Positions 17,608 to 40,885 are shown, counted from the first letter of the stretch. The stretch: DNA of 64,000 nucleotides from Fimbriosthenelais zetlandica (GCA_977030845.1 OZ365111.1:21266001-21330000), one strand, 5' to 3'. The notes: generated by a model from the sequence alone, not told the origin. Numbers and translations are program-made.

Positions 17608-20600
17608 TCAGCTAAGTTTTATTGTTTTAGCTTTGACTTTATGTTGACCCGGAACACGGCGACCACGAAAATCCCCGACTAAATCTTCAATATCCTTGAT
17701 TTCTTCTCTTCCACTATCTTCCCTATCACTCGCCAAATTATTTTCCTGAAAAATACCATACCCTTGAGTCAGGCTTCTACTGTTTTTTGAATAAAGATTT
17801 TTAATTACAGAAATAGAAACAACCCAAAATGTATGCCTACATTAGGCCAAAGTACTAAATGATTTACAATTCAGCCCGTTTCAAAACTAAAATTAGCCAT
17901 AGGCTTAACATGGTAAAGGTACCACTTTGTAGGATTAAGAAATGGCCTGATTTTATCTACTGGTAGGGATAGGAGTAAGATGTAGAAACTTACTGATTTT
18001 CCTGTTTCTGTACAGCACGTGGGTTTACTGCATTGACAACTTTTCTTTTTGCCTTCTGACTGAGCTGTAAAAAGCTCTATAGCAGCCTGCCAAAATTCTT
18101 TTTTCCACGCCATGAAATCTTTTTCTTGACCTGAAAAAACAAGAAACGATTTTATAAATATGAACAATGCTCTCCAATCATAAGTAATATAGAAAATGTA
18201 CTTCAATTCACTGCAAAAATCTAGTAAACCGACCTACCTCCTCCACTAATTTCTGAAATATTTTCATCCAATATCCCAACAGGTAATAGTCGATGGTTAG
18301 CACCAAGTATTTCTAATGAAGTGTCGATTGTCATTGCAACCTAGAAAAATCAATGAAAACATAGATGAATGCAAATGCCAGGATTCAATGCTAAACTAGG
18401 CATAATGTTACCAGTAATCATTAATAATCCCATTTCCCCTGCCAGACTTAGCTTTAAAAATCCACTAAGCCATTATAATATCATCATGACATACCCGGGA
18501 AAGTTTTACAAGACAGTCTCACACCTCAATCATTAACCTCGTTAAATCAGGCAGCGTTCATCTTTAGAGATCAAGTATTCATTTGCATTACCAAGAATTC
18601 TCATGATTCATATAGAATATAATTATAGAATTAATTCATCGGAATAGACTGAAGGTAATTATGTACCTCCTGTCCAGGTCGCCAATTACAATCAGCCTAA
18701 AACCTGTGTATATAACAAAGACCCTCTGTGAGAGAAAGATGTGTATTGAGAGGCAGACTGAAAATCATAGATGAGTACCAAAAAACATACTTAAAACCTG
18801 AATATTTACTTAAAAACTTAATATATAAATCCATCGTTTCCTAATGCCTGTTACTCTATGTTAAAATAATCTTTGAAATTTAAATATTTCAAAAATTCCC
18901 TTTTTGACATAAGTCCTCATGCAAGGACTAAGTGCTTTCCAAACATAGAAAAAGTAAAATCTTTAGTTCTAGGCCCATAGACACCAACTCAACACCTAAA
19001 TCCATCTTTTTGTAATTCCTATTCCACTATGTGTAAAGTGAACATTTTCAAACTTCTTTCTAGACTCTTGTCTCTAAGCAAGGAAACTCTAGTACTGGTC
19101 CTTAACTCCTGTCACAACACAGCCTCCTAGCCCTCTATTCAAATTCTCCAGTCCTGCAACCACCCACCATGCAGTCAGCCCTGTTGCCATAGCAACTGTA
19201 GAGGGTAGACCCCCTAGACTTGACCACAACTGCTTGGCCACACCACTAACCATACTCACACCCACTCACCAGGCACCCACCAGTTTCCCCCCTAGACTTG
19301 ACAACAAACCCCTTGGCTATATATAATTCTTTTGAATAATCACTTATTGTGTCAAAGTAATCAATTTCAGGCTAATGTTTTTAAATATGAGAGAACAAAA
19401 CTAAACTCTGGATAGGTATTACAAATTGTAGATTCAGATATTCTCTATTTTATACTTAACTTAATTCTCTCAGTGCCAGGAGGCATATAAGTTTCACTGT
19501 TACATGTGGACTCAAATGCTTCAATTACAGAGATGTGTCATTGCTTTCATTAAAAAGAAGCTGAACATTTAATTTTGCAATCGATCTTCTCATTGAATAG
19601 AGGCCATTGTTATGATTGACCAGCAGAGTTATTCATTGAATAGTTCAAATAAAAAATAGGCTTAATGAAAGAAAGGCTTAGGCAAGTCCACTAATCCTTA
19701 GCCCCTCCAAGTGAGCAGTGGAGGGCGGGGGGCTGCTGCAGGTGCTACCTTGACCTTCATGTTTTAAATATTGTGTATTGTAGGCATTAGAAAAAACAAT
19801 GACTGGAATGCATAATGCAATACATGTATGCAAAGGTCTATTTATGTGCTTCAATCTATCTAAGTCATACTAAGCTCTATCTTTAAAAATAAACTTGACA
19901 GAGTGAAAAAAGCATGAAAATATTGACCAATATGGAAAATATTAAAAAATTCATAACAAATCAACTTATGAGTGGAATGCATAATGCAATATAGGTATCA
20001 ACAGGTCTTTTTATGTACTTTCATTTATTTAATTCATTCCAAGCTCTATCTTTTAAAGTAAACTTGCTGGATTGAATAAACTGAAAATATTGGGTCAATT
20101 ACTTTTTACATCATTGTTTCATCATGTTTTGTCATGAAAATAAACAAAAAGAAATGACCACCTTATAAATAACAGCCAAGGGTAACTCATGTACTAAGTG
20201 TTTTTTTCTCAGAATAAAAACCAGGAAGGAGATCGATTTTAAGTGATTTCATCCCCCTGACCTAATTCCACGTAAATAATTAGGTCAAAGGTCAAATATG
20301 TAGGTCAACTTATGGTCCATCATGTATCTTTACACTACATACCATTCATCTTATTCTAGATCCTCATGGGTCAAAAAAAAATTACAATCAAATTTTACCA
20401 ATTTGGCTGGTTTGGTGACGTCATGTGACGTCATGTGATGACGTATGACATCCATTCATCACATGTGACCACTTCTTACTATGGTCTACAATATGTGTGA
20501 AAACCAGATTCCTAGCTCTAATATAAACCCGTTTTTCATCAGTTGTCTAACTACAACAATAATAAAAAAAAAAAAAAAAATAAGTGTAGAACAACGAGCA

Positions 20601-23600
20601 CAAAATCTACAACCCCATTTTCCCCATAAAGGGGAAATGGGATTAATTTCCTCCACATTTTAACTCAAAACGGTGGCATTATCAATTTTATAATTATTAT
20701 ATAATTTCAAATATCGGAAGAAAGCTAAAAACGACGTAATAAATGAGTAATAAATACCTCGCAAAAGTCTTCCTGATATTGACTGTTCCCAATTCCAAGC
20801 ACTGTATACTCAAGCCCCTCCAACATGTTCCTGGGCAGGCGGGAATCATTGGCGCCCTCAAGTAGCCATTTATGGAACCAGACGGTATCATCAGGAGGGA
20901 TTCCATCGTTACAGGTGGCAATGATAAACACTATTAAGATTCCATTATTAATCTGCAAAACATTTTATATTGATAATTTTAAGCATTAGTTGAAAAATGG
21001 AATCATGTCGAAATATCTGATTGACCGAAGAAGGAACGTGATTAATTTTTAAAAGTGACAAATTCTGTACCTCTTGGGACAAACAATCCTCTGCATCGTA
21101 ATCTCTTATATTAACCATGGAAGACTTCAGATTCTGAATTCTTGCTTCTTCATCAAGAATAACGGCATATTTCTGTAAAGGTAAATAATTGAATCAAAGG
21201 CGTAGCCCAAAATAAACCATTCTTTTTTCTTCGAATCATGGATAATACAAAGGAATTGGTTCATGATAGGTGATGATTGTTATTCAAGCCCATTTCTTGT
21301 TTCCTTCTGGATTTTTTACCTATAAAACGAGGCGTTATAATAACATGAAACAATCTAACCTGAAATCGTAGCTTGCCTGTGCAGCTTCTGTTTCGGAGCC
21401 ATATACAATTTTGATACCGTTCAATCTCTTGCGTCGACTTCCAAAGCTGCTAACAATTCTCTGTTGGAATTAAGGGGAAATACATTTTCTTCAGCTGCAA
21501 GTACGGTATAAGTCAAATTCGGAAGAAATTACTTATATTCTTTAATTAATAATACAACGGAATATGACAAAATTCATTAAAGACTTTACTAGTCCTATAA
21601 TTCTATATTCACTCAAAATATATACATGTACGCGTTTCTCACCTGAAGGGTGAAGGGAAAAATATCTTATAATTATGTAGATGAGTTGAACGCCTACCTT
21701 GATGTATAATTTTGACTTTGGCTGTGTAATCAGCCAAGTTAAAACAAATCCAGTAGTTGCTAGGCTTAATACAGATATGGTGACGTGTTGTCTCATTTGT
21801 GATAGTAATTGACCAAATAAAGACAATCGACCTGGAAAAAAAACCGTTTTAGCATTTAAACTTTTTTGTCAGATAAGTCTAAATTAAAGATATATGTTCG
21901 CATTAGGTATTGTAGACTAGTCACTAATCTACCATCATCCATAGCCAGGACTTGTGGGGTGGGGATAATCCATTGGAGTTGGGTGTAGGGACCCCAGGAT
22001 ATTTTTTTTTTCAGGAATGCCAGTTTTTCTCTCAATCTCAGAGCCAACATTTGTCTCAAAATAGTTATTAATCCCATTTCCCCTTTATGGGGAAAATGGG
22101 GTTTTAGATTTTGTGCTCGTTGTTCTACACTATTATTTTTTTTTTAATGTTGTAGTTAGACTTTTGATGAAAAACGGGTTTATATTAGAGGTAGGAATCT
22201 GGTTTTCACACATATTGTAGACCATAGTAAGGAGTGGTCAAATGTGATGAATGGATGTCATACGTCATCACATGACGTCATATGACGTCACCAAACCAGC
22301 CAAATTGGTAAAATTTGATTGTAATTTTTTTGGACCCATGCGGATCTAGAATAAGATGAATGGTATGTAGTGTAAAGATACATGATGGACTATAAGTTGA
22401 CCTACATATTTGACCTTTGACCTAATTAGTTATGTGTAATTAGGTCAGGGGTATGAAATCTCTCAAATGCCATTTCTTCCCAATTAAAAAATGTTAGTAA
22501 TTGATTACACTTGGTTAATAAGAATCCTTTGGGTGGGGCGTATCTGAAAAATAGTTTTTGGTGAAGACCCATGTGACGTAAATGACGTCACATTGATGTA
22601 AAATCTAATTAACCCAATATTTTCAGTTTATTTAATCCAGCAAGTTTATTTTTAAAGACAAAGCTTAAAATGAATTAGATGAATTAAAGTACATAAAAAG
22701 ACCTGTTGATACCTATATTGCATAATGTATTCCACTTGTAAGTTGATTTGTTATAAATTTTTTAATATTTTCCATTTTGGTCAATATTTTCATGCTTTTT
22801 TCACTCTGGCAAGTTTATTTTTAAAGATAGAGCTTAGTATGAATTACAAAAAATGATGCACATAAATAGACCTTTGCATACATGTATTGCATTATGCAGT
22901 ACAGTAATTCTTTCTAATTCAGCTTTTGAATACACAAAAATTTAAGACAAGGTCAAGGTAGCACCTGCAGCACCCCCCCCCCCCCCCACCCCCCAACCCT
23001 CCACTCTCGTGGTCACTTGGATTAGTGAAGAGAGACTTGCCTAAGTCTTTCTTTCTTTAAGCCTATTTTTTATTAGAACTGTTCAGAGAATAACTCTGCT
23101 GGTCAATCATAACAATGGCATCTATTTTATGAGAAGATTGATTGCACAATGAAATGTTCAGCTTCTTTTTAATGAAAGCAATGACACATCTCTGGTAATT
23201 GAAGCATTTGAGTCCACATGTAACAGTGAAACTTATATGCCTCATGGCACTGAGAGAATTAAATTAAGTATAAGATAGAGAATATCTAAATCTACAATTT
23301 GTAATACCTATCAAGAGTTTAGTTTTGTTCTCTCATATTTAAAAACATTAGCCTGAAATTGATTACTTTGACACAATAAGTGATTATCCAAAAGAATTAT
23401 ATATAGCCAAGGGGTTTGTGGTCAAGTCTAGGGGGAGACCCTGACTGGTGTGACTTAGAGGTGTTGTGGTCAAGTCTAGGAGGAAACTCTGTTGTTGCCA
23501 TGGCAGCAGGTCAGGGTGCAAGACTGGAGGATTAGAATAGAGGGCTAGGAGGCTGTGTTGTTATAGCAGTTAAGTACCAGTACTTTGCTTAGAGACAAGA

Positions 23601-24621
23601 GTCTAGACAGAAGTTTGAAAATGTTCACTTTACACATAGTGGAATAGGAATTACAAAAAGATGGATTTAGGTGTGTCTATGGGCCTAGAACTAAAGATTT
23701 TACTTTGTCTATGTTTGGAAAGCACTTAGTCCTTGCATGAGGAATTATGTCAAAATGTGAATTTTTGAACTATTTAAATTTCAAAGTGTATTTTACTATA
23801 GAGTACCAGGCATTAAGAAACGATGACTTATATATTAAGTTTTTATGTAAATATTATGGTTTTAAGTATGTTTTTTTGGTACTCATCTATAACTTTCAGT
23901 CTGCCTCTCAATACACATTTTTCTCTCAAAGAGGGTCTTTGTTGTGTACACAAGTTTTAGGCTGGTTGTAATTGGCGACCTGGACAGGAGATAGATAATT
24001 GCCTTCAGTCTATTCCTATAAATTAATTCTATAATTATGTTCTATATGAATCATCAGAATTCTTGGTAATGCAACTAAATAATTGATCTCTAAAGTTAAA
24101 CGCTGCCTGATTTAACGAGGTTAATCATTGAGGTGTGAGGCTGCCTTGTAAAACTCTCCTGGATATGTCATGATGATATTATAATGGCTTAGTGTATTTT
24201 TAAAGCTTATTCTGGCAGGGGAAATGGGATTATTAATGATTACTAGTAATCGTGGTGGCTAGTTGACAAAACATTTCTATACTGTAGGTATAACCACCTC
24301 GGAATTAAAGTGGGTACCTATCATCCTATGCTCGTTCCCAAATTCGAGGAGAAGCGGGTACTTTAAGGTATAGCTCCTTGTGGTTTGTATGATGCATTTT
24401 TATTTCACAGTGCATATTTTTCGTTGTGTTATTCGACCATATTTCATATAGTTGGCACAAGCGATGGTATTTTCTCCTTGATTTGTTTGAAAAAGGGGTG
24501 CTTTTGGACGGGTAAAATCTCCTTGTTTTTGAAGAAAAAGGGTATTTTTTAGGGTAAAATCCGTGAAAATGGTTGGATTTTGAAAGTAGGGAACGAGCAT
24601 AGGTACCCACTTTAATTCTGA

Positions 24622-24654
<33 letters not shown>

Positions 24655-24918
24655 GAGTGCATATATAATCCCCGCCCCACCCCATTATGCACAAACAAAT
24701 TTATCTCCAGGTTGATGGGGATATCAACTGCCCTATACCACCCATTGTCCAATTATTTTAGGCACCCCCACACTCCACATCCCCCACTCAAATTCTACAC
24801 TCTTTGACTTTTGACTCTACACTACAGTCTACACCACAGGCACAGGCAGTGCCAGTGGCACAGTCTCTAGCCTAGGCTACTCACCTGGATCGGCGTGAAC
24901 TGCAGACAGATGAAGCAT
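17608..24918 (-). CDS. TYW1-like protein with only the N-terminal membrane anchor and flavodoxin domain (no radical SAM domain)
   Basis: Exons 21831-21698 (hydrophobic ISVLSLATTGFVLTWLI), 21460-21377 (IKIVYGSETEAAQ), 21172-21071 (KYAVIL...NIRDYDAED), 20952-20758 (IVFIIATCNDGIPPDD...WFHKWL...LEYTVLGIGNSQY), 18340-18238, 18130-17994 (KDFMAWKKEF...CQCSKPTCC) and 17745-17608 (KDIEDL...stop). These align in order with the TYW1 N-terminal half as I recall it. The first coding exon is uncertain: 24918-24885 is phase-compatible, or translation starts at the internal MRQH. Confidence 0.75.
18396..20647 (-). mobile_element. ~2.2 kb non-autonomous repeat element, copy 1 (Helitron/Helentron-like ends)
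   Basis: Reverse complement of 22067-24262 and 37648-39853. One end carries the hairpin CCCATTTCCCC-TTTAT-GGGGAAAATGGG; the other carries the complementary GGGGAAATGGGATTA and ends CTAG|TT. No coding capacity seen. Confidence 0.8.
22067..24262 (+). mobile_element. ~2.2 kb non-autonomous repeat element, copy 2
   Basis: Colinear with copy 3 and inverted relative to copy 1. Starts attaatcccatttcccc and ends ...ggggaaatgggattattaatgattactagtaat...ctag|tt. Confidence 0.8.
24298..24622. mobile_element. MITE-like element with ~30-bp inverted arms, followed by a poly-C run
   Basis: gaattaaagtgggtacctat[catcctat]gctcgttccc (24302-24339) is the reverse complement of gggaacgagcataggtacccactttaattc (24589-24618) apart from an 8-nt insertion. 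Confidence 0.6.
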
Positions 24919-25358
24919 TAAAAAGAATAAATATGACAAAACTTTTCTAACGTCTAACATTCTAATCATTATGAACATGGATAGATGTCACTTTCAGATT
25001 GTTTTGTGTGGTTTTGAGTTTGACACTGTCTTCACAGACAGACATGTCCGACAGGTGCTCGTGCCAAGGGGAATCCCAGGATATGACGTCACAAAAAAAA
25101 CTAGGTTAAATAACCTCAAAGCGGGTTTATATTTTCCGAGGCATGTAATCATTTTCACATACCTTGATTCTTTGATAAAAATGTTATAATTCAATATTTA
25201 CAAACCTTGCTTTCCTCCAATAAGACATTTTTGTATACATGACAAATTTACAAACTCTCTCCTCGAGGCTATCTTTATGGGGAATTCCCTGACCTACTGA
25301 CCGACTTCGTCATGTTCGTGTTGGCGCCTTTTAAGAATCGGTAAAACGAAAAAATACC
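24919..25358. promoter_or_regulatory. Probable bidirectional promoter between the TYW1-like and HIRIP3-like genes
   Basis: Short region between divergent coding starts, with CpGs at 25260-25350 and a TGACGTCA at ~25084. Confidence 0.5.
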
Positions 25359-28300
25359 ATGGAAAAGTTTGTAAAGAACTTTATTAAGTCCACAGATGAC
25401 CTAAGGTAAATCTACGCATCTTCCTAATGTAGTCTAACTTATTGATCGTTTCTATTTAAAATATTGTCAATAATAATATTGCTATTATTCAATTTATTGG
25501 TTCTACCTGGATTGAATAGTGCCCCCGGGCAATACCCTACTGGCCCTAGCCTAGGTCTAGGGCTAGGGCTAGGCGTATCTATGTAGATGTATGAAATAAA
25601 TATCTCATTTTTTCACAGCACCCTGACTCAGCGAGTCATTCGAGACAAGTACATTGCTTCAATCCAAGAGGATGGTATCAGTGACCAGCAAAAAATTGAC
25701 CTGAGGGCTATCGCCCTGAAGTGCATAGCAGAAGAGGTATACGCCCTAAAACTTAAGCGGGTCTTAGGGGTACTAAAGCAGGCAAGCAAGGATTATATAG
25801 ACCTTATCAGTTAGGCCTATATAGTATAGCAAGGATAGTAAAGTACAGTAAAGCATCCTTGCCTAGTTTAATATATTACATAATACCAGCCCCCGATAAT
25901 GATTGATGTGTAATGATGAACATAGGCCCTATGTTCATCATTACACATTAATCATAGGGACATTGGTTTCATTGTGTTTGTTACAAAATGTAAATCTTCG
26001 TATCGTAAAGGTTACAGTACATATTCATCTTTGCCAACTTTGGAGCAATTTTCAGTCATAAGGCATGATTAGCCCAAGTATCACCTTTAAACAAAAACAA
26101 AAAAACAACTGATTATATATGCGATGATGGCCCATTATGTATGGTATTTCAATTTCAGAGTGAAGCCCGTGAGAAAAAAGAGGAATCTGAGAGTGAGGCC
26201 TCCACTGTCATCGATGAGAAGTCGAGGGAGGATTCAGACAGTGGTAATGGTGGAGAATCAGTGGTATGTATAAATTATCATTTGTAAATTGGTACTGTAG
26301 TAATGATGACCAAATATTTAACTGAGAAAGAAAGTGATTCTTCTACAAAAATATAAAAACCCAATAAGCCCTGTAAATGTGTAAGCTACTGCACTGAGCA
26401 TTATTTTTTTGCAGGCGGTTTCACCTGCCAAGAAGGACAAAGTAAATAAGAGAAAAAGATCCAGTACATCATCCGTAGATAAAGGAACACCAAGGTAGGT
26501 TCCTATCCCAGTTCCGAAAATGTAGAATTCTGGTGCTCATTAAAATAAGCCTGTTAGTTCTACCTCTACTCCTTTTCGAAGGGCACCCATTATGTAGTAC
26601 AGTCTTTCTATTATTTTCTTTGACATACTGCAGTTTTCCCTTAAAACGGTCTAATTTAAAATCCATGCATTCGTATCTCACAGGCGAAAGGCAAAGAAGC
26701 TAAAGAAGTCCTTCTCATCAGGATCAGACGATGAATCAGTCTCGGATGAAAGCATTGATTCTGAAGATTCAGCCCGCAAGCCTAGCCCCAAAAAATCCAC
26801 CAAAGTTGTAAAGAAGCCAGCCAAAAAGCGTACCCGCCCTAAAAATTCTAAAAGAAGGAAAACGCAAACGAAGAAAAAGAAGAAGGCGGGATATTGTGAA
26901 GATGAATTTGATGATGACTTTGTGAGCTCTGGGGAAGAAGATGACTCTGAGGGGGAATTTGAAATTGAACTTGAAGATCAACCCACACCCAAAAAAGGGC
27001 GACCAACACGTAGGGCTGTGAAGGAAAGACAAGTTGTTATTGACTCCCCATCAGAAGAATCCGATTTTGAACACGAAGATGTGGCCAAACGAAAACCCAA
27101 GGGCAAATCTAAAGCGCCCAAAAAAACATTGGCGAAGAAGTCTTTGGGTAGCAATGACAGTTTTTCAGATTCTGATTGCAAACAACGTAAAAAATCCGCA
27201 GACACAAGCAGTGATTCGGAGGCCGAAGTTCCCCTAAGCAAAATCAAATCAAAGAGGAAGACATCACCAAAAAAGTCCACATCACGAAATACAAAGCTAA
27301 AGGAATCCGAATCTGAATTCTCAGAGGAGGAAGGGGAGACAGTTGGGCGTAAGAAAAAAGGCCAAACTCAAAAACAGCCGTCAGAATCAGAGGAAACTGA
27401 TGTAGAACCAGTTAAGCCAAAAAAGAAAACTGTTCCACCGACTCCTGAGTCAAGCGATGAAGAGGAAGACGTGCCCCTTAACAAGTTACAATCTGATAAA
27501 AAATCTGGATCTGACGAGCATAAAGAAGCATCTGAAGAATCTGATGTTGGAGCAGTCAAAATATCAAAGAACGGTCAGAGAACAGTAGACTCGGATGAGA
27601 CAGAGGAGGATGTACCTCTTAAAAATTTAAAGACCCCTCCATCTGAAGCTGACTCGGGGAAAACTATCTCTGAGGAGGAACCAGAGCCTGAAGTCTTAAA
27701 AAGTGCTCAGGGTTCAGAATCTAGTCACTCGGAGCAAGAAGAAGTTCCTCTAAAACAATTGAAATCCAAGAATAAATCTGAGAAAGCTGAAGAACCCAAA
27801 AGGAAGAAGGGCAAGCCTTCATCAGAAGAATCTGAAGAGGAAATACCCTTGAAATCTGAAAAAAAGTCAAAGTCAAAAAGTAAGGTGATTGAATCAGATT
27901 CAGGTACAGAATTGGAATCAGGGAGTGAGAGTTTTTCTGGAAAAGCAAGATTGAGAAATAAGGTTTCAGCAAAATCTAGACTAAACACTAGTGTAGCTTC
28001 CCATAGTGGACGTCGAGCGTCAAAATCTGCTAAATACAAAGAAGACTCTGATTCTGATAGCCCCTCAGATGAAGAACCACTGAAAAAGAAATCTAGTAAA
28101 AGTACTCCAATGTCAAGCTCTGATAGTGATGAAGACATTCCCTTAAAACAAGTGAAGTCGAAGAAAAGCCCAGGTGTTAGTTCACCAAAGAAAAAACAAA
28201 GGAAGAAATGCAGGTCAAAATCTTCATCAGAAGAATCCGAAGAGGAAATGCCCTTGAAAAAAGTGAAATCTAAAAAAGAGTCAAAGTTAAAAAATAAGGC

Positions 28301-29768
28301 GATTTTATCAGATTCGGGTACAGAATCGGAATCAGGGAGTGGGAGTTCTTCTGAAAAACCAAGATTGAGAAATAAGGCTTCAGCAAAATCTAGACTGAAC
28401 ACTAGTGTAGCTTCCCGTAGTGCACGACGAACAACAAAATCTGCTAAATACAAAGAAGACTCTGATTCTGATAGCCCCTCAGATGAAGAACCACTGAAAA
28501 AGAAATCTAGAAAAAATACTCCAATGTCAAGCTCTGATAGTGATGAAGACATTCCCTTAAAACAAGTGAAGTCGAAGAAAAGCCCAAGTGTTAGCTCACC
28601 AAAGAAAAAACAAAGGAAGAAATGCAGGCCAAAATCTTCATCAGAAGAATCCGAAGAGGAAATGCCCTTGAAAAAAGTGAAATCTAAAAAAGAGTCAAAG
28701 TTAAAAAATAAGGCGATTTTATCAGATTCGGGTACAGAATCGGAATCAGGGAGTGGGAGTTCTTCTGAAAAACCAAGATTGAGAAATAAGGCTTCAGCAA
28801 AATCTAGACTGAACACTAGTGTAGCTTCCCGTAGTGGACGACGAACAACAAAATCTGCTAAATACAAAGAAGACTCTTATTCTGATAGCCCCTCAGACGA
28901 AGAACCACTGAAAAAGCTTAATCGCACTAAAAAGAAAACTATTTCTGAGGAATCTGACGAGGAACCAGAGCCTGAGGATTTGGGAAATGCTCATGGTTCT
29001 AGTGACACAGAGGAAGAAGTTCCGCTAAAACGATTGAAATCCAAGAAAGAATCTGAAGCTGAGGAACGCAAGAGGATGAAGGCCAGGCGAAGATCTTCAT
29101 CAGAAGAATCAGAAGAAGAAATGCCCTTGAAAAGGTTGAAATCTGAAAAAAAGACAAAGTCAAAAAGTAAGGTGATTGAATCAGACCCAGGTACAGAATC
29201 AGGGAGTGAGAATTCTTCTGAAAAAGCAAGATTGAGAAATAAGTCTACAGCAAAGTCTAGAATGAACACTAGTGTAGCTTCCCGTAGTGGTCGTCAAGCG
29301 ACAAAATCTATTAAATACGAAGACTCTGAGTCTGATAGCTCCTCAGATGAAGAACCACTGAAAAAGAAATCCGAAGTTAAAATACATTTGAAAAAATTAA
29401 AATCTCAAAAAGAATCAAAGTTAAAAAGTAAGGCGATTGAATCAGATCCGGCTACAGAATCAGAATCAGGGAGTGAGAGTTCTTCTGAAAAAGCCGCATT
29501 GAAAAATAAGTCTCCATCAAAATCCAGAATGAAAACCGGTGTAGCTTCCCGTAGTGGACGTCAAGTGACAAAATCTATTAAATACGAAGACTCGGAGTCT
29601 GATTGCTCCTCAGATGAACCATTGAATAATAAATCTAGAAAAAATACCCCATCATCAAGCTCTGATAGTGAGGAGGACATTCCCTTAAAACAAGTGAAGT
29701 CGAAGAAAAGCCCAGGTGTTAGTTCAACAAAGAAATGTCATGTCATCTTATATCGCGTAGATGTATAA
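25359..29768 (+). CDS. HIRIP3-like protein (~1140 aa): conserved N-terminal helical domain plus a very long Lys/Ser/Glu-rich repeat region
   Basis: Exons 25359-25405, 25619-25736, 26159-26263, 26415-26494 and 26684-29768 are all phase-compatible. The N-terminus MEKFVKNFIKSTDDLSTLTQRVIRDKY...QKIDLRAIAL resembles human HIRIP3 (EMQEFTRSFFRGRPDLSTLTHSIVRRRY, from memory). No C-terminal CHZ domain seen. Confidence 0.65.
27930..29740 (+). repeat. Coding tandem repeat with a 420-bp (140-aa) period; near-identical central copies and diverged flanking copies
   Basis: For example agaaatctag...actccaatgtcaagctctgatagtgatgaagacattccc recurs 420 bp apart (~28087 and ~28507). The RLRNK..AKSRLNTSVASRS block occurs five times in the translation. 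Confidence 0.9.
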
Positions 29769-36767: not shown

Positions 36768-39700
36768 ATGCCTGTAAGTACTGTTTTCGCCGAGATATTG
36801 GATCAGGGTTTGATTATTTATAATATAGAGACAACAAAGAGTCATTGTACTTCGTCATTAGATATCTAGGATTGTGTAAATTCTGGATTTTCTATATCCC
36901 CCGCCCGGCCCCGGGTCCGGGGTCCCCGGCATCCTTCACCGAACGAGGGCGGGGCGGGGCCGGGGGAGGGAGGTAGGGGGCTAGGGCTTGTTTGGCACGC
37001 GTTAACTTTTCAGGTTGGACTTGATTTGACCATGAGAAAATGTTGCTTTGGTTATATAATAGTTCACCTCTCTAGTATTATACAGAATAAAGTCATGTCT
37101 GACTATAATTGGAGGTGTCAGGTCAAAGCCAAGGGATTATATTTTATAAATTATAGCCTACTACCGGGTCGATTTAAAAAAGGTCTAAATATGTATGTTC
37201 TTCTTCTTTCAGGCCAATCATTCCCAGTTTCTCAATTCCAAACTAGTGGTTGGAAACATGGCAATGTTGCCTTTAAGAACTCAGTTCAAAGGGCCAGCTC
37301 CTAAGGAAAGTAAGTCAAGTGATATAGCCTAGTTATTATAGCCAATATTATATAGGCCTATAGTTTATTAATTTATACCGCGGTCCGGAGTTATTCACTT
37401 GAATGAATTTCTGCTTTAATTACAATTACCAGTAAATCCTTTCTTTTTGTAAAATATTTTATTACATTCGAACAGGTGGTGATTTCGATATTATTGACGA
37501 ATCGCTCCACTATTTTAAGGCCAATGTGTTCTTTAGGAACTATGAAATCAAGGTAAGACAAGAAGTAAACCTAAATTCTATGCTAGAGTCCTGAATTCAT
37601 TTTATTGCCTAATTTTAATTTACCGCTCCTGTACCTGTATTGTATTTATTAATCCCATTTCCCCTTTATGGGGAAAATGGGGTTTTAGATTTTGTGCTCG
37701 TTGTTCTACACTATTATTTTTTTTTTTTTTATTAATGTTGTAGTTAGACTTTTGATGAAAAACGGGTTTATATTAGAGGTAGGAATCTGGTTTTCACACA
37801 TATTGTAGACCATAGTAAGAAGTGGTCACATGTGATGAATGGATGTCATACGTCATCACATGACGTCATATGACGTCACCAAACCAGCCAAATTGGTAAA
37901 ATTTGATTGTAATTTTTTTGGACCCATGCGGATCTAGAATAAGATGAATGGTATGTAGTGTAAAGATACATGATGGACTATAAGTTGACCTACATATTTG
38001 ACCTTTGACCTAATTAGTTACATGGAATTAGGTCAGGGGTATGAAATCACTTAAATGCTATTTTGGCCAGATTAAAAATATTCAAGAGTGATTACACTTG
38101 GTTCATGAGCAGTCAGTGGGTGAGGCATATATGAGAAATATATTTTGTAGTTGGTTGAAACGACGTAAGATGACGTCAAAGTGATGTAAAAACTAATTAA
38201 CCTAATATTTTCAGTTTATTTAATTCAGCAAGTTTATTTTTAAAGATAAAACTTAAAATGAATTAGATGAATTAAAGTACATAAAAAGACCTGTTGATAC
38301 CTATATCGCATTATGCATTCCACTCATAGGTTGATTTGTTATGAATTTTTTAATATTTTCCATTTTGGTCAATATTTTCATGTTTTTTTCACTCTGGCAA
38401 GTTTATTTTTAAAGATAGAGCTTAGTATGTACTAGACAAAAAAAGCACAAAAATAGACCTTTGCATACATGTATTGCATTATGCAGTCCAGTAATTTTTT
38501 CTATATATACATTTCAATACACAAAATTTAAGACAAAGGTCACTTGGAGCTAGGGGATCAAGGTAGCACCTGCAGCAGCCCCCACCCTCCACTGGCCACT
38601 TGGAGGGGGGTCAGGATTATTGGACAGAGACTTGCCTAAGTCTTTCTTTCATTAATCCTATTTTTTATTTGAACTGTTCAGTGAATAACTCTGCTGGTCA
38701 ATCATAACAATGGCCTCTATTTAATGAGAAGATTGATTGCAAAATGAGATGTTCAGCTTCTTTTGAATGAAAGCCATGAAACATCTCTGGTAATTGAAGC
38801 ATTTGAGTCCACATGTAACAGTGAAACTTATATGCCTCTCCTGGCACTGAGAGAATTAAGTTAAGTATAAGATAGAGAATATCTGAATCTACAATTTGTA
38901 ATACCTATCCAGAGTTTAGTTTCTGTTCTCTCATATTTAAAAACATTAGCCTGAAATTGATTACTTTGACACAATAAGTGATTATCCAAAAGAATTATAT
39001 ACAGCCAAGGGGTTTGTGGTCAAGTCTAGGGGGAGACCCTGACTGGTGTGTTTGCTTAGAGGTATGACCAAGAAGTTGTGGTCAAGTCTAGGAGGAAACT
39101 CTCTCGTTGCCATGGCAACAGGTCAGAATGGTGGGTGGGTGGGTGCAAGAGTGGAGGATTAGAATAGAGGGCTTGGAGGCTGTGTTGTTACTGCAGTTAA
39201 GTACCAGTACCAGTAGAGACAAGAGTCTAGACAGAAGTTTGAAAATGTTCACTTTACACATAGTGGAATAGGAATTACAAATAGATGGATTTAGGTGTGG
39301 AGTTGCTTTATGTGGGCCTAGAACAAAAGATTTTACTTTTTCTATGTTTGGAAAGCACTTAGTCCTTGCATGAGGAATTATGTCAAAAAGTGAATTTTTG
39401 AAATATTTAAATTTCAAAGTTTATTTTAACAGAGTAACAGGCATTAGATAGATTTATATATTAAGTTTTTAAGTAAATATTAAGGTTTGAAGTGTGTTTT
39501 TTGGTACTCATCTATGATTTTTAGTCTGCCTCTCAATACACATCTTTCTCTCACAGAGGGTATTTGTTATGTACACAGGTTTTAGGCTGATTGTAATTGG
39601 CGACCTGGACAGGAGGTAGATAATTGCCTTCAGTCTATTCCTATAAATTAATTGTATAGTTATATTCTATATGAATCATCAGAATTCTTGGTAATGTAAT

Positions 39701-40885
39701 TGAATACTTGATCTCTAAAGATAAACGCTGCCTGATTTAACGAGGTTAATCATTGAGATGTGAGACTGTCTTGTAAAACTTTCCCGGGTATACCATGATG
39801 ATATTATAATGGCTTAGTGGATTATTAATGATTACTGGTAACATTATGACTAGTTACCGTATTGATAACAAATATTTATTTCCATATTTCTTTTACAGAG
39901 TGAGGCTGACCGAACGTTAATCTACATTACTTTATACATCACAGAATGTTTGAAAAAGTTACAAAAGGTGAGGAAAAAGTTGTGTTTTGAGCTGTGTAAA
40001 AAAAATCACAAATATCATGATTGGCATTAAATTGTAGTTCCTGTTCGGCTTTTAACCTTTAGCCTTAATAATGTGGGGGTATAAATTATATCCCATAATC
40101 TCTGTACAGCCTTGATTCTTCTGACCATTAAAATGATTGTTTTTTTCCAGTGCCAGTCCAAAAATCAGGGATTGAAGGAGATGCACTCACTTGCCATCTC
40201 TCGGTTCTTCATTCCTGGCGAGTCAAATTTCCCCCTCAACGCCTTGTATGGAAAACCTTCTAATCGCCAGGAAGAAGGTAGGAAATTATTTTTACTATGG
40301 TTTTTTCATAAGGTCACAATATCTTAAATAAATGGGACCGAGCTCAAATTCATAGCTGAAGTATTTCATTTCTGAATTTTAAAGTAGTTTATGGACATGT
40401 ATTGAACCACTGCTTGGTTTTGCATCTGGCGTTATATTAAATTTTCATCCTCAGTTGTAAAGGAGAATTTTGATTTAATATTGCACAGATATGATGAGAA
40501 ACTACGTTCAACAACTGCGACAGGAGACAGGCGTTCGTGTAGTTGAAAAGATATTTGATCCTGCTACGGATAAACCTTCAAAGGTGAGTAAATCGAGTTC
40601 TCATAATAAAATATTGTTCATGGAGTTATTTATAGTCAGTTAATTAATGTAAAAAACAATTCAGACAGGATGATTCTCTAACGCCCCAGATACTTTCTTG
40701 TACACATTCAGTTATTTTTCTTAATAATTGTGTAAATACGTCTTTTCCAAATACATATATATAAATATTGAATTCCTAAGTGGTTTATTTGAGATTCTGA
40801 TATGATAAGCTTTCCTTTGCAGTGGTGGATGTGCTTCGTTAAAAGGAAATTCATGGACAAGTCTTTGTCTCAACCAGGACATTAA
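36768..40885 (+). CDS. ARPC3: Actin-related protein 2/3 complex subunit 3 (p21)
   Basis: Exons 36768-36773, 37213-37309, 37476-37552, 39899-39967, 40151-40277, 40489-40583, 40823-40885. Translation includes [45 protein letters not shown] and [19 protein letters not shown]. Confidence 0.97.
37648..39853 (+). mobile_element. ~2.2 kb non-autonomous repeat element, copy 3 (ARPC3 intron 3)
   Basis: Colinear with copy 2. It has a small deletion that removes the distal GGGGAAATG motif, and it ends cattatgactag|tt 45 nt before the exon-4 start. Confidence 0.8.

What the first reader, a model, noticed from the sequence alone, without database searches (positions are those of the whole stretch)
18396..24262. 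Inverted pair of 2.2 kb elements brackets four exons: giant pre-mRNA hairpin and circRNA candidate
Seen: copies 1 and 2 of the element are reverse complements in two introns of the same gene, separated by ~1.4 kb that holds exons 21831-21698, 21460-21377, 21172-21071 and 20952-20758 (134+84+102+195 = 515 nt). Established: complementary repeats in flanking introns promote back-splicing and exon skipping, attract ADAR editing and can mediate inversion. Inference: the locus may produce a 515-nt circRNA, a skipped linear isoform lacking most of the flavodoxin domain, long dsRNA or endo-siRNAs, or an inversion polymorphism of the enclosed exons.
Basis: partly seen in the sequence, partly recalled or inferred. 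Interest (0 to 1): 0.7.

Follow-up and report, generated by a model that had tools for sequence, protein, structure and literature searches.

The report
Inverted transposon pair around four exons
Two recently inserted, oppositely oriented copies of a 2.2-kb non-coding rolling-circle transposon lie on either side of four exons of a TYW1-like gene; such pairs are known to promote circular RNA, but no RNA data were available to show that it happens here.

Summary
Copy 1 (18396-20646) and copy 2 (22068-24262) are reverse complements, 86% identical with gaps and 89% without. They enclose 1,421 nt holding the four stated exons (515 nt, flavodoxin domain).

The element is a non-coding Helitron-superfamily transposon built like DINE-1/HINE, the non-autonomous partners of Helentrons. 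It leaves no target duplication, forms head-to-tail arrays and has at least 1,164 copies. Intact Helentron genes are present in the genome.

The two arms belong to different subfamilies. Each differs by about 0.3% from its closest relatives, so these are two independent, very young insertions. The same tail-to-tail arrangement occurs at least three more times among 100 listed termini.

Copy 1 is certainly intronic. It expanded a 166-nt intron and ends 55 nt from the acceptor. Copy 2 is intronic only if a candidate first exon ending at 24885 is real. I rate that about 65% on sequence statistics alone.

If both arms are transcribed together, they could form about 1,980 base pairs starting 236 and 111 nt from the back-splice sites. 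This is the geometry of Drosophila laccase2. No sequencing run was listed, so circRNA, editing and siRNAs remain untested.

Skipping the four exons would shift the reading frame. Inversion is unlikely.

The scan had not noted this kind of element pair elsewhere. The finding is ordinary and of low interest.

The parts
18396..20646 (-). Copy 1, subfamily A, 2,251 nt. The element's sense (5' TTAAT...CCTAG 3') is on the minus strand, the same sense as the host gene. It lies in the intron between exons 20952-20758 and 18340-18238.
   Evidence: 99-100% identical to more than 30 full-length copies. (0.36% from the majority of its subfamily). (ends).
22068..24262 (+). Copy 2, subfamily B, 2,195 nt. 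The element's sense is on the plus strand, antisense to the host gene. It lies 236 nt upstream of acceptor 21831.
   Evidence: 97-99% identical to dozens of copies of its own subfamily. (0.27% from the majority). (ends).
20647..22067 (-). Unique 1,421-nt spacer, the 'loop', holding the four bracketed exons.
   Evidence: single copy in the 447-Mb assembly.
21698..21831 (-). Exon (134 nt) coding the N-terminal transmembrane segment. It carries the back-splice acceptor candidate at 21831.
21377..21460 (-). Exon (84 nt), followed by a GC-AG intron.
21071..21172 (-). Exon (102 nt), flavodoxin domain.
20758..20952 (-). Exon (195 nt), flavodoxin domain. It carries the back-splice donor candidate at 20758.
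18238..18340 (-). Next exon (103 nt). Its acceptor lies 55 nt from the end of copy 1.
17994..18130 (-). Exon (137 nt).
17608..17745 (-). Last recognisable exon, ending in TGA. No radical SAM part follows.
24885..24978 (-). Candidate first coding exon (model b). In-frame ATGs lie at 24978, 24969, 24960 and 24918. The donor is CAG|GTGAGT after 24885, in phase 1, which matches acceptor 21831. TGACGTCA at 25091 and TATAAA at 25131 lie upstream.
   Evidence: (unique DNA). (the only donor of 6 bits or more on this strand between 26000 and 21832; chance 0.3%)..
21933..21942 (-). Rival first coding exon (model a): ATGGATGATG|gtagat followed by a 101-nt intron. It would leave copy 2 upstream of the start codon by 125 nt.
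   Evidence: (donor -0.6 bits; such a candidate arises by chance in 21% of resampled sequences).
24298..24622 (.). MITE-like insert with 46-nt terminal inverted repeats, between copy 2 and candidate exon 1.
   Evidence: (I14).
37649..39853 (+). Copy 3, subfamily C, in the same orientation as copy 2. It is not part of the hairpin.

Best explanation
Two independent, very recent insertions of a 2.2-kb non-coding rolling-circle transposon landed tail-to-tail in a TYW1-like, flavodoxin-only gene on the minus strand. The element is built like DINE-1/HINE, the non-autonomous partners of Helentrons, and the two copies come from different subfamilies. Copy 1 expanded a 166-nt intron to 2.4 kb (shown). 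Copy 2 sits 236 nt upstream of the acceptor of the first bracketed exon, most likely inside a first intron of about 3 kb (inferred, about 65%). The pair is a by-product of a transposon burst, not a built-in device. If both copies are transcribed in one pre-mRNA, they would pair over about 2 kb and bring donor 20758 next to acceptor 21831. That would favour a 515-nt exonic circRNA at the expense of the linear mRNA, as shown experimentally for the inverted DINE-1 repeats of Drosophila laccase2. This last step is prediction only. I put the chance of a detectable back-splice at about 0.3.
For: Repeat pair.

High copy number and youth:
- each window copy is 97-100% identical to dozens of full-length copies of its own subfamily.
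- 0.2-0.4% from the subfamily majority, against 89% between the arms.
- 1,164 exact 25-nt termini in the genome, against 0 for the control pattern.

Transposon type:
- No target duplication. Seven uninterrupted paralogues of a Helentron gene give the empty site.
- 21 of 21 copies are flanked by A on one side and 20 of 21 by T on the other.
- A head-to-tail tandem junction has no extra base.
- The first 16 nt of the TTAAT end are an inverted repeat of a sequence about 30 nt from the CTAG end, and there is a strong 5' hairpin with z = -4.2.
- There are internal repeats and no ORF over 74 aa.
- This matches the HINE/DINE-1 description in PMC4067079.
- Intact Rep + PIF1 + endonuclease (Helentron) ORFs are in the genome.

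Gene model.

Candidate exon 1.

Duplex.

Precedent: PMC4617980 and PMC12404201.
Against: - No RNA evidence of any kind. No run was listed, and no protein from this species was found.
- The upstream exon is inferred from a donor matrix recalled from the human consensus and from resampling, not from transcripts.
- A proximal ATG exon (21942-21933) is also possible. It would put copy 2 outside the transcript.
- The host gene lacks the catalytic half of TYW1 and has an altered FMN-binding loop. It may be weakly expressed or decaying.
- The 3' palindrome of the element folds no better than shuffled sequence.
- No autonomous partner with the same ends was found.
Confidence: 0.75

Rival explanations
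1. Copy 2 is not transcribed with the gene. The gene starts at the proximal exon (ATG 21942, 101-nt intron) or at the internal ATG in exon 21831-21698. Copy 2 is then a promoter or 5'-flank insertion, and no hairpin or repeat-driven back-splicing occurs.
For: - An in-frame ATG has a good context (G at -3 and +4), and a 101-nt intron is typical of this gene.
- Two homology-supported donors of the gene are equally weak, at about 0 bits.
- TYW1 relatives begin only 2-13 residues before the aligned segment.
Against: - Such a candidate arises by chance in 21% of resampled 235-nt sequences.
- The distal exon's features arise in only 0.3%.
- The distal exon lies in unique DNA, with a TGACGTCA palindrome and a TATAAA upstream.
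Confidence: 0.25
2. One reading: the locus actually produces a 515-nt circRNA and/or long dsRNA that is edited or diced, lowering output of the linear mRNA.
For: - The geometry and duplex strength are favourable.
- About 100 nt of each repeat sufficed for laccase2 circularisation, and about 40 nt in human cells (PMC4617980).
- Complementary matches flanking fly circRNAs are enriched for Helitrons (PMC12404201).
Against: - There are no RNA data.
- It requires copy 2 to be intronic, the gene to be expressed, and intron 1 to survive until copy 1 is transcribed.
- From general knowledge, long duplexes are also unwound or edited, which suppresses circles.
Confidence: 0.3
3. The host gene is a dead or dying remnant of TYW1 that tolerates insertions and is barely transcribed, so the pair has no consequence at all.
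For: - No Radical_SAM or Wyosine_form part was found in the window or anywhere in the assembly.
- The FMN phosphate loop reads GSETEAA where most relatives keep a TG pair.
- Three young insertions lie in or next to the gene.
Against: - All seven exons keep one open frame of about 300 codons with intact splice sites.
- The insertions spared splice sites and the branch-point region.
Confidence: 0.2
4. The inverted pair is an assembly artefact, or marks an inversion of the enclosed exons.
For: Inverted repeats can mislead assemblers and can mediate inversion (general knowledge).
Against: - The arms are from different subfamilies, 89% identical with a longest perfect match of 74 bp, so they are easy to tell apart in assembly and poor substrates for homologous exchange.
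- Exon order and strand are collinear with the exons outside the pair.
- The spacer is single copy.
Confidence: 0.03

Closest known systems
Drosophila laccase2 and PlexA circRNA loci flanked by inverted DNAREP1_DM (DINE-1) repeats (Kramer et al. 2015, PMC4617980)
   Same: Both have an inverted pair of non-autonomous Helentron-type elements lying close to the splice sites on either side of the circularising exon(s). In the fly, base pairing between the repeats was shown to be necessary.
   Different: - Here the arms are far longer and better matched: about 2.2 kb at 86-89%, against 106-272 nt at 69-75%.
- They enclose four exons rather than one.
- They are very young.
- No circle has been observed.
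- The upstream arm's intronic status is inferred.
Mouse Sry circular transcript formed by long flanking inverted repeats (as summarised in PMC4288412)
   Same: Kilobase-scale inverted repeats form a stem-loop in the primary transcript that places the donor next to an upstream acceptor.
   Different: The Sry repeats are a large palindromic duplication, not transposon copies, and they enclose a single exon. Circularisation depends on use of a distal promoter, which is analogous to the start-site question here.
Alu and other reverse-complementary matches flanking animal and plant circRNAs (general knowledge; cited within PMC4617980 and PMC12404201)
   Same: Transposon copies in opposite orientation in flanking introns promote back-splicing and compete with linear splicing.
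   Different: The transposon class is different (SINE/LINE). Typical matches are 30-300 nt.
DINE-1 / HINE, non-autonomous Helentrons (Thomas et al. 2014, PMC4067079)
   Same: - Non-coding.
- A subterminal inverted repeat starts 2 nt from the 5' end and ends about 30 nt from the 3' end.
- An extra 5' inverted repeat forms a hairpin.
- Internal repeats and an A/T microsatellite.
- A short 3' palindrome.
- T-rich target without duplication.
- Head-to-tail arrays.
   Different: - The element is 2.2 kb, larger than many HINEs.
- The 3' end reads CTAG, which also fits the canonical Helitron CTRR.
- A|T and T|T insertion cannot be told apart.
- No autonomous partner sharing the ends has been identified.

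Membership tests
HINE / DINE-1-like non-autonomous Helentron | No coding capacity | tested here: met
   The longest ORF in either copy is 74 aa.
HINE / DINE-1-like non-autonomous Helentron | 12-15 bp subterminal inverted repeats, 2-4 nt from the 5' end and tens of nt from the 3' end (PMC4067079) | tested here: met
   The 5' end reads TT+AATCCCATTTCCCC, and its complement GGGGAAATGGGATT ends 30 nt before the CTAG end. This holds in all three subfamilies.
HINE / DINE-1-like non-autonomous Helentron | Short palindrome 8-35 bp from the 3' end | tested here: inconclusive
   Palindromes are present (ATTACTAGTAAT in subfamily B, an imperfect one in A). Their folding energy is not better than shuffles, z = -0.5 to -0.6.
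HINE / DINE-1-like non-autonomous Helentron | Insertion at TT without target duplication | tested here: inconclusive
   The absence of a duplication is shown by one filled site against seven empty sites. Because of a 3-nt microhomology and conserved AA...TT flanks, A|T and T|T each fit 20 of 21 copies.
HINE / DINE-1-like non-autonomous Helentron | Autonomous Helentron (Rep + helicase + endonuclease) sharing the termini | tested here: inconclusive
   Intact Helentron ORFs exist in the genome. The two examined do not show the same ends.
Canonical Helitron | 5' TC, 3' CTRR, 16-20 nt hairpin about 11 nt from the 3' end, A|T insertion | tested here: not met
   The 3' CTAG fits CTRR and A|T is possible. 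However, the 5' end is TT, the strong hairpin is at the 5' end, and the 3' palindrome is weak.
Repeat-driven exonic circRNA locus (laccase2 type) | Reverse-complementary sequences on both sides of the circularised exons | tested here: met
Repeat-driven exonic circRNA locus (laccase2 type) | Both repeats lie in introns of one pre-mRNA | tested here: inconclusive
   The downstream repeat does. The upstream repeat does only if candidate exon 24978-24885 is real.
Repeat-driven exonic circRNA locus (laccase2 type) | Observed back-splice junction, RNase R resistant | not testable with these tools
   No sequencing run was listed for the locus.
TYW1 (tRNA wybutosine-synthesising protein 1), host gene | N-terminal flavodoxin domain plus Radical_SAM and Wyosine_form domains | tested here: not met
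   Flavodoxin_1 is present. The best full-length relatives carry all three domains. The other two were found neither in the window nor in the assembly.

The most novel reading that the evidence does not exclude
The two insertions have just created a new circRNA or hairpin-RNA locus. If they are still polymorphic, individuals carrying both insertions would divert TYW1-like pre-mRNA into a 515-nt circle and long dsRNA and so silence the gene. That would be a natural before-and-after case of circRNA birth by Helentron-type elements outside Drosophila.
Probability: 0.2. Interest if true: 0.4.

Novelty: new member of a known kind. Interest (0 to 1): 0.2.

Why it matters
If RNA data confirmed a back-splice, this would be a clean, very young example of how a transposon burst creates circRNA or dsRNA loci, with an exceptionally long stem. 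It would also extend the DINE-1/laccase2 mechanism beyond flies. As it stands, it is one of many inverted transposon pairs in a genome with over a thousand copies of the family, placed in a gene of doubtful function. The practical value is the annotation. It defines a high-copy, currently active HINE-like family with three subfamilies, gives its exact ends and one empty site, and gives a corrected model of the host gene.

Tried and rejected
- RNA and DNA runs. The look-up of sequencing runs on the spacer (kind any) and on the exon block (kind rna) listed none (one search failed as busy). Read laying was therefore never used.
- Same-species proteins or transcripts. The search for homologous proteins with the 65-aa exon found no candidate.
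- The rest of TYW1. Neither Pfam Wyosine_form nor full-length TYW1 P0022 found a catalytic half in the genome. tblastn of four TYW1 proteins found none in the window.
- A capture or duplication origin for the enclosed exons is rejected. The spacer is single copy.
- The idea that the 2.2-kb element is the 3' part of the Helentron on C27 is rejected. It is a nested insertion that splits the helicase motif, and seven paralogues lack it.
- Autonomous partner by shared termini: not found in the two Helentrons examined.
- Canonical Helitron classification is rejected on the 5' end and the hairpin position.
- A|T versus T|T could not be resolved. The tandem junction fits both.
- The donor scoring uses a matrix recalled from the human consensus and is only approximate.

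Full report
**1. The observation**

The region holds a long inverted repeat. The repeat finder returns 13 collinear inverted segments that tile 18408-20647 against 22067-24249, at 78-99% complementarity. blastn aligns them as one block, 85.65% identical over 2,272 columns with E = 0. A third copy lies at 37.6-39.9 kb.

They sum to 515 nt, are open in a single frame and match Pfam Flavodoxin_1 at E = 3e-16.

**2. What the element is**

Each of the three window copies is 97-100% identical over its full length to dozens of copies elsewhere in the 447-Mb assembly, but each to a different set.
- Within a subfamily, the window copies differ from the majority state at 0.23-0.36% of positions.
- Between subfamilies, identity is 89-92%.

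The 86-89% identity between the two arms therefore reflects subfamily divergence, not age. Both arms are very young, independent insertions.

An exact 25-nt terminus occurs 1,164 times in the genome, against 0 for the control pattern. The element has no ORF above 74 aa.

A subfamily-B copy is nested in the helicase region of a large transposon gene on C27. Seven uninterrupted paralogues give the empty site. The insert is exactly CTAG...GGGATTAA, with no target duplication. In 21 copies the flanks are A (21/21) and T (20/21). Head-to-tail arrays exist, and one junction reads ATTAA|CTAG with no extra base.

Read from the TTAAT end, the element has these features:
- a subterminal inverted repeat that starts 2 nt from the 5' end, with its partner ending 30 nt before the 3' CTAG;
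- a strong 5' hairpin (-10.5 kcal/mol, z = -4.2);
- internal repeats of about 125 nt;
- an A/T microsatellite;
- a short, weak 3' palindrome.

This is the architecture described for DINE-1 and HINEs, the non-autonomous partners of Helentrons (PMC4067079). It is not that of canonical Helitrons, which have 5' TC and a hairpin near the 3' end.

The genome carries about 30 Helitron_like_N matches, with open frames of up to 4,260 aa. One examined ORF has Rep, PIF1 helicase and a C-terminal Exo_endo_phos endonuclease, which is the Helentron make-up. I did not find an autonomous copy with the same ends. A|T and T|T insertion cannot be distinguished.

**3. The host gene**

On the minus strand the four exons are followed by 18340-18238, 18130-17994 and 17745-17608 (stop). 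All are in frame and align to the N-terminal third of TYW1 proteins.

Copy 1 therefore sits in an intron that was 166 nt long before the insertion. It lies 111 nt from donor 20758 and 55 nt from acceptor 18340.

No Radical_SAM or Wyosine_form part was found in the window or in the assembly. That is the subject of another note (s1-214095). It matters here only because it raises doubt about how much the gene is used.

**4. Is copy 2 in an intron?**

Exon 21831-21698 begins in phase 1 at a strong acceptor, so a coding exon should lie upstream. There are two candidates.

(a) ATGGATGATG|gtagat at 21942-21933, followed by a 101-nt intron. This would leave copy 2 125 nt upstream of the start codon, in the promoter or 5' UTR.

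(b) An exon ending at 24885 with a perfect CAG|GTGAGT donor in phase 1. An open frame runs back to ATGs at 24978-24918. TGACGTCA and TATAAA motifs lie 100-150 nt further up. The DNA is unique.

I scored donors with a matrix recalled from the human consensus, which is an approximation.
- Candidate (b) scores 9.3 bits and is the only donor of 6 bits or more on this strand between 26000 and 21832.
- An exon with its properties arises in 0.3% of resampled sequences.
- A type-(a) candidate arises in 21% of resampled sequences.
- Two bona fide donors of the gene are as weak as (a), so (a) is not excluded.

I put about 65% on copy 2 being intronic. Intron 1 would then be 3,053 nt, of which 2,195 nt is copy 2 and about 325 nt is a MITE-like insert.

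**5. What would follow**

If both arms are on one pre-mRNA, RNAduplex predicts 1,980 base pairs (-3018 kcal/mol). There are 26 perfect helices of 25 bp or more, the longest 74 bp. The elements are tail-to-tail, so pairing starts at the very edges of the 1,421-nt loop.

For Drosophila laccase2, inverted DNAREP1_DM (DINE-1) repeats that are only 69-75% identical over 106-272 nt are necessary for circularisation, and about 100 nt of each suffices (PMC4617980). In fly neurons, complementary matches flanking circRNAs are enriched for Helitrons (PMC12404201). The mouse Sry circle is the kilobase-scale precedent (PMC4288412). Back-splicing of 20758 to 21831 is therefore mechanistically plausible.

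- Skipping 515 nt shifts the frame and stops after 14 codons. It would give a decay target, not a shortened protein.
- Inversion by recombination is unlikely with 89% identity.

**6. What could not be done**

No sequencing run was listed for the locus, and no same-species protein was found. Other agents working on this genome also report no transcript data. Expression, start site, back-splice, editing, small RNAs and insertion polymorphism are all untested.

**7. How unusual it is**

Among the first 100 listed termini on one contig, three further tail-to-tail pairs with spacers under 500 nt occur, and I checked one by sequence. With more than a thousand young copies, inverted pairs near or in genes are expected.

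**Verdict**

The structure is real and well defined. It is a new instance of a known kind and is functionally unproven. Interest is low.

Noticed in passing
window 17608-24978 (minus strand): The TYW1-like gene encodes only the membrane anchor and flavodoxin part, about 300 codons. No Radical_SAM or Wyosine_form part was found in the window or anywhere in the assembly. The FMN-binding loop reads GSETEAA where most relatives keep a TG pair. This overlaps note s1-214095.
   Followed up: partly
window 24885-24978 (minus strand): The candidate first exon would add a signal-peptide-like N-terminus (hydrophobic core followed by AVHA|DP) in front of the usual TYW1 membrane anchor.
   Followed up: partly
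window 24298-24653: A MITE-like insert with 46-nt terminal inverted repeats (24298-24343 and 24577-24622) lies next to a run of 29 C (G on the minus strand) at 24625-24653.
   Followed up: no
window 26922-29768 (plus strand): A 948-aa open frame rich in Ser, Glu and Lys contains 414-nt and 267-nt tandem repeats (27850-28916 and 29127-29618). It is the divergent neighbour of the TYW1-like gene.
   Followed up: no
window 37649-39853: A third full-length copy of the element, subfamily C, lies in the same orientation as copy 2 and is 0.23% from its subfamily majority.
   Followed up: yes
L033+L035 (G000:C27:6882000-6901500): A Helentron-type gene has a 4,260-aa open frame whose N-terminal part holds in-frame tandem repeats of 786 nt. 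Its helicase region is split by a nested subfamily-B copy, and seven paralogues are uninterrupted.
   Followed up: partly
G000:C1:43087998-43094550 and C29:13005073-13010428; L047: The 2.2-kb element forms head-to-tail tandem arrays. One junction reads ATTAA|CTAG with no intervening base, as expected for rolling-circle read-through.
   Followed up: partly
G000:C1:30363308/30363704, 30421353/30421748, 30444846/30444982; L048: These are further tail-to-tail inverted pairs of the same element, with spacers of about 135-400 nt. The first two look like a duplicated pair.
   Followed up: partly
window 21376-21375 (minus strand): The intron after exon 21460-21377 has a GC-AG boundary (CAG|gcaagc).
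   Followed up: no
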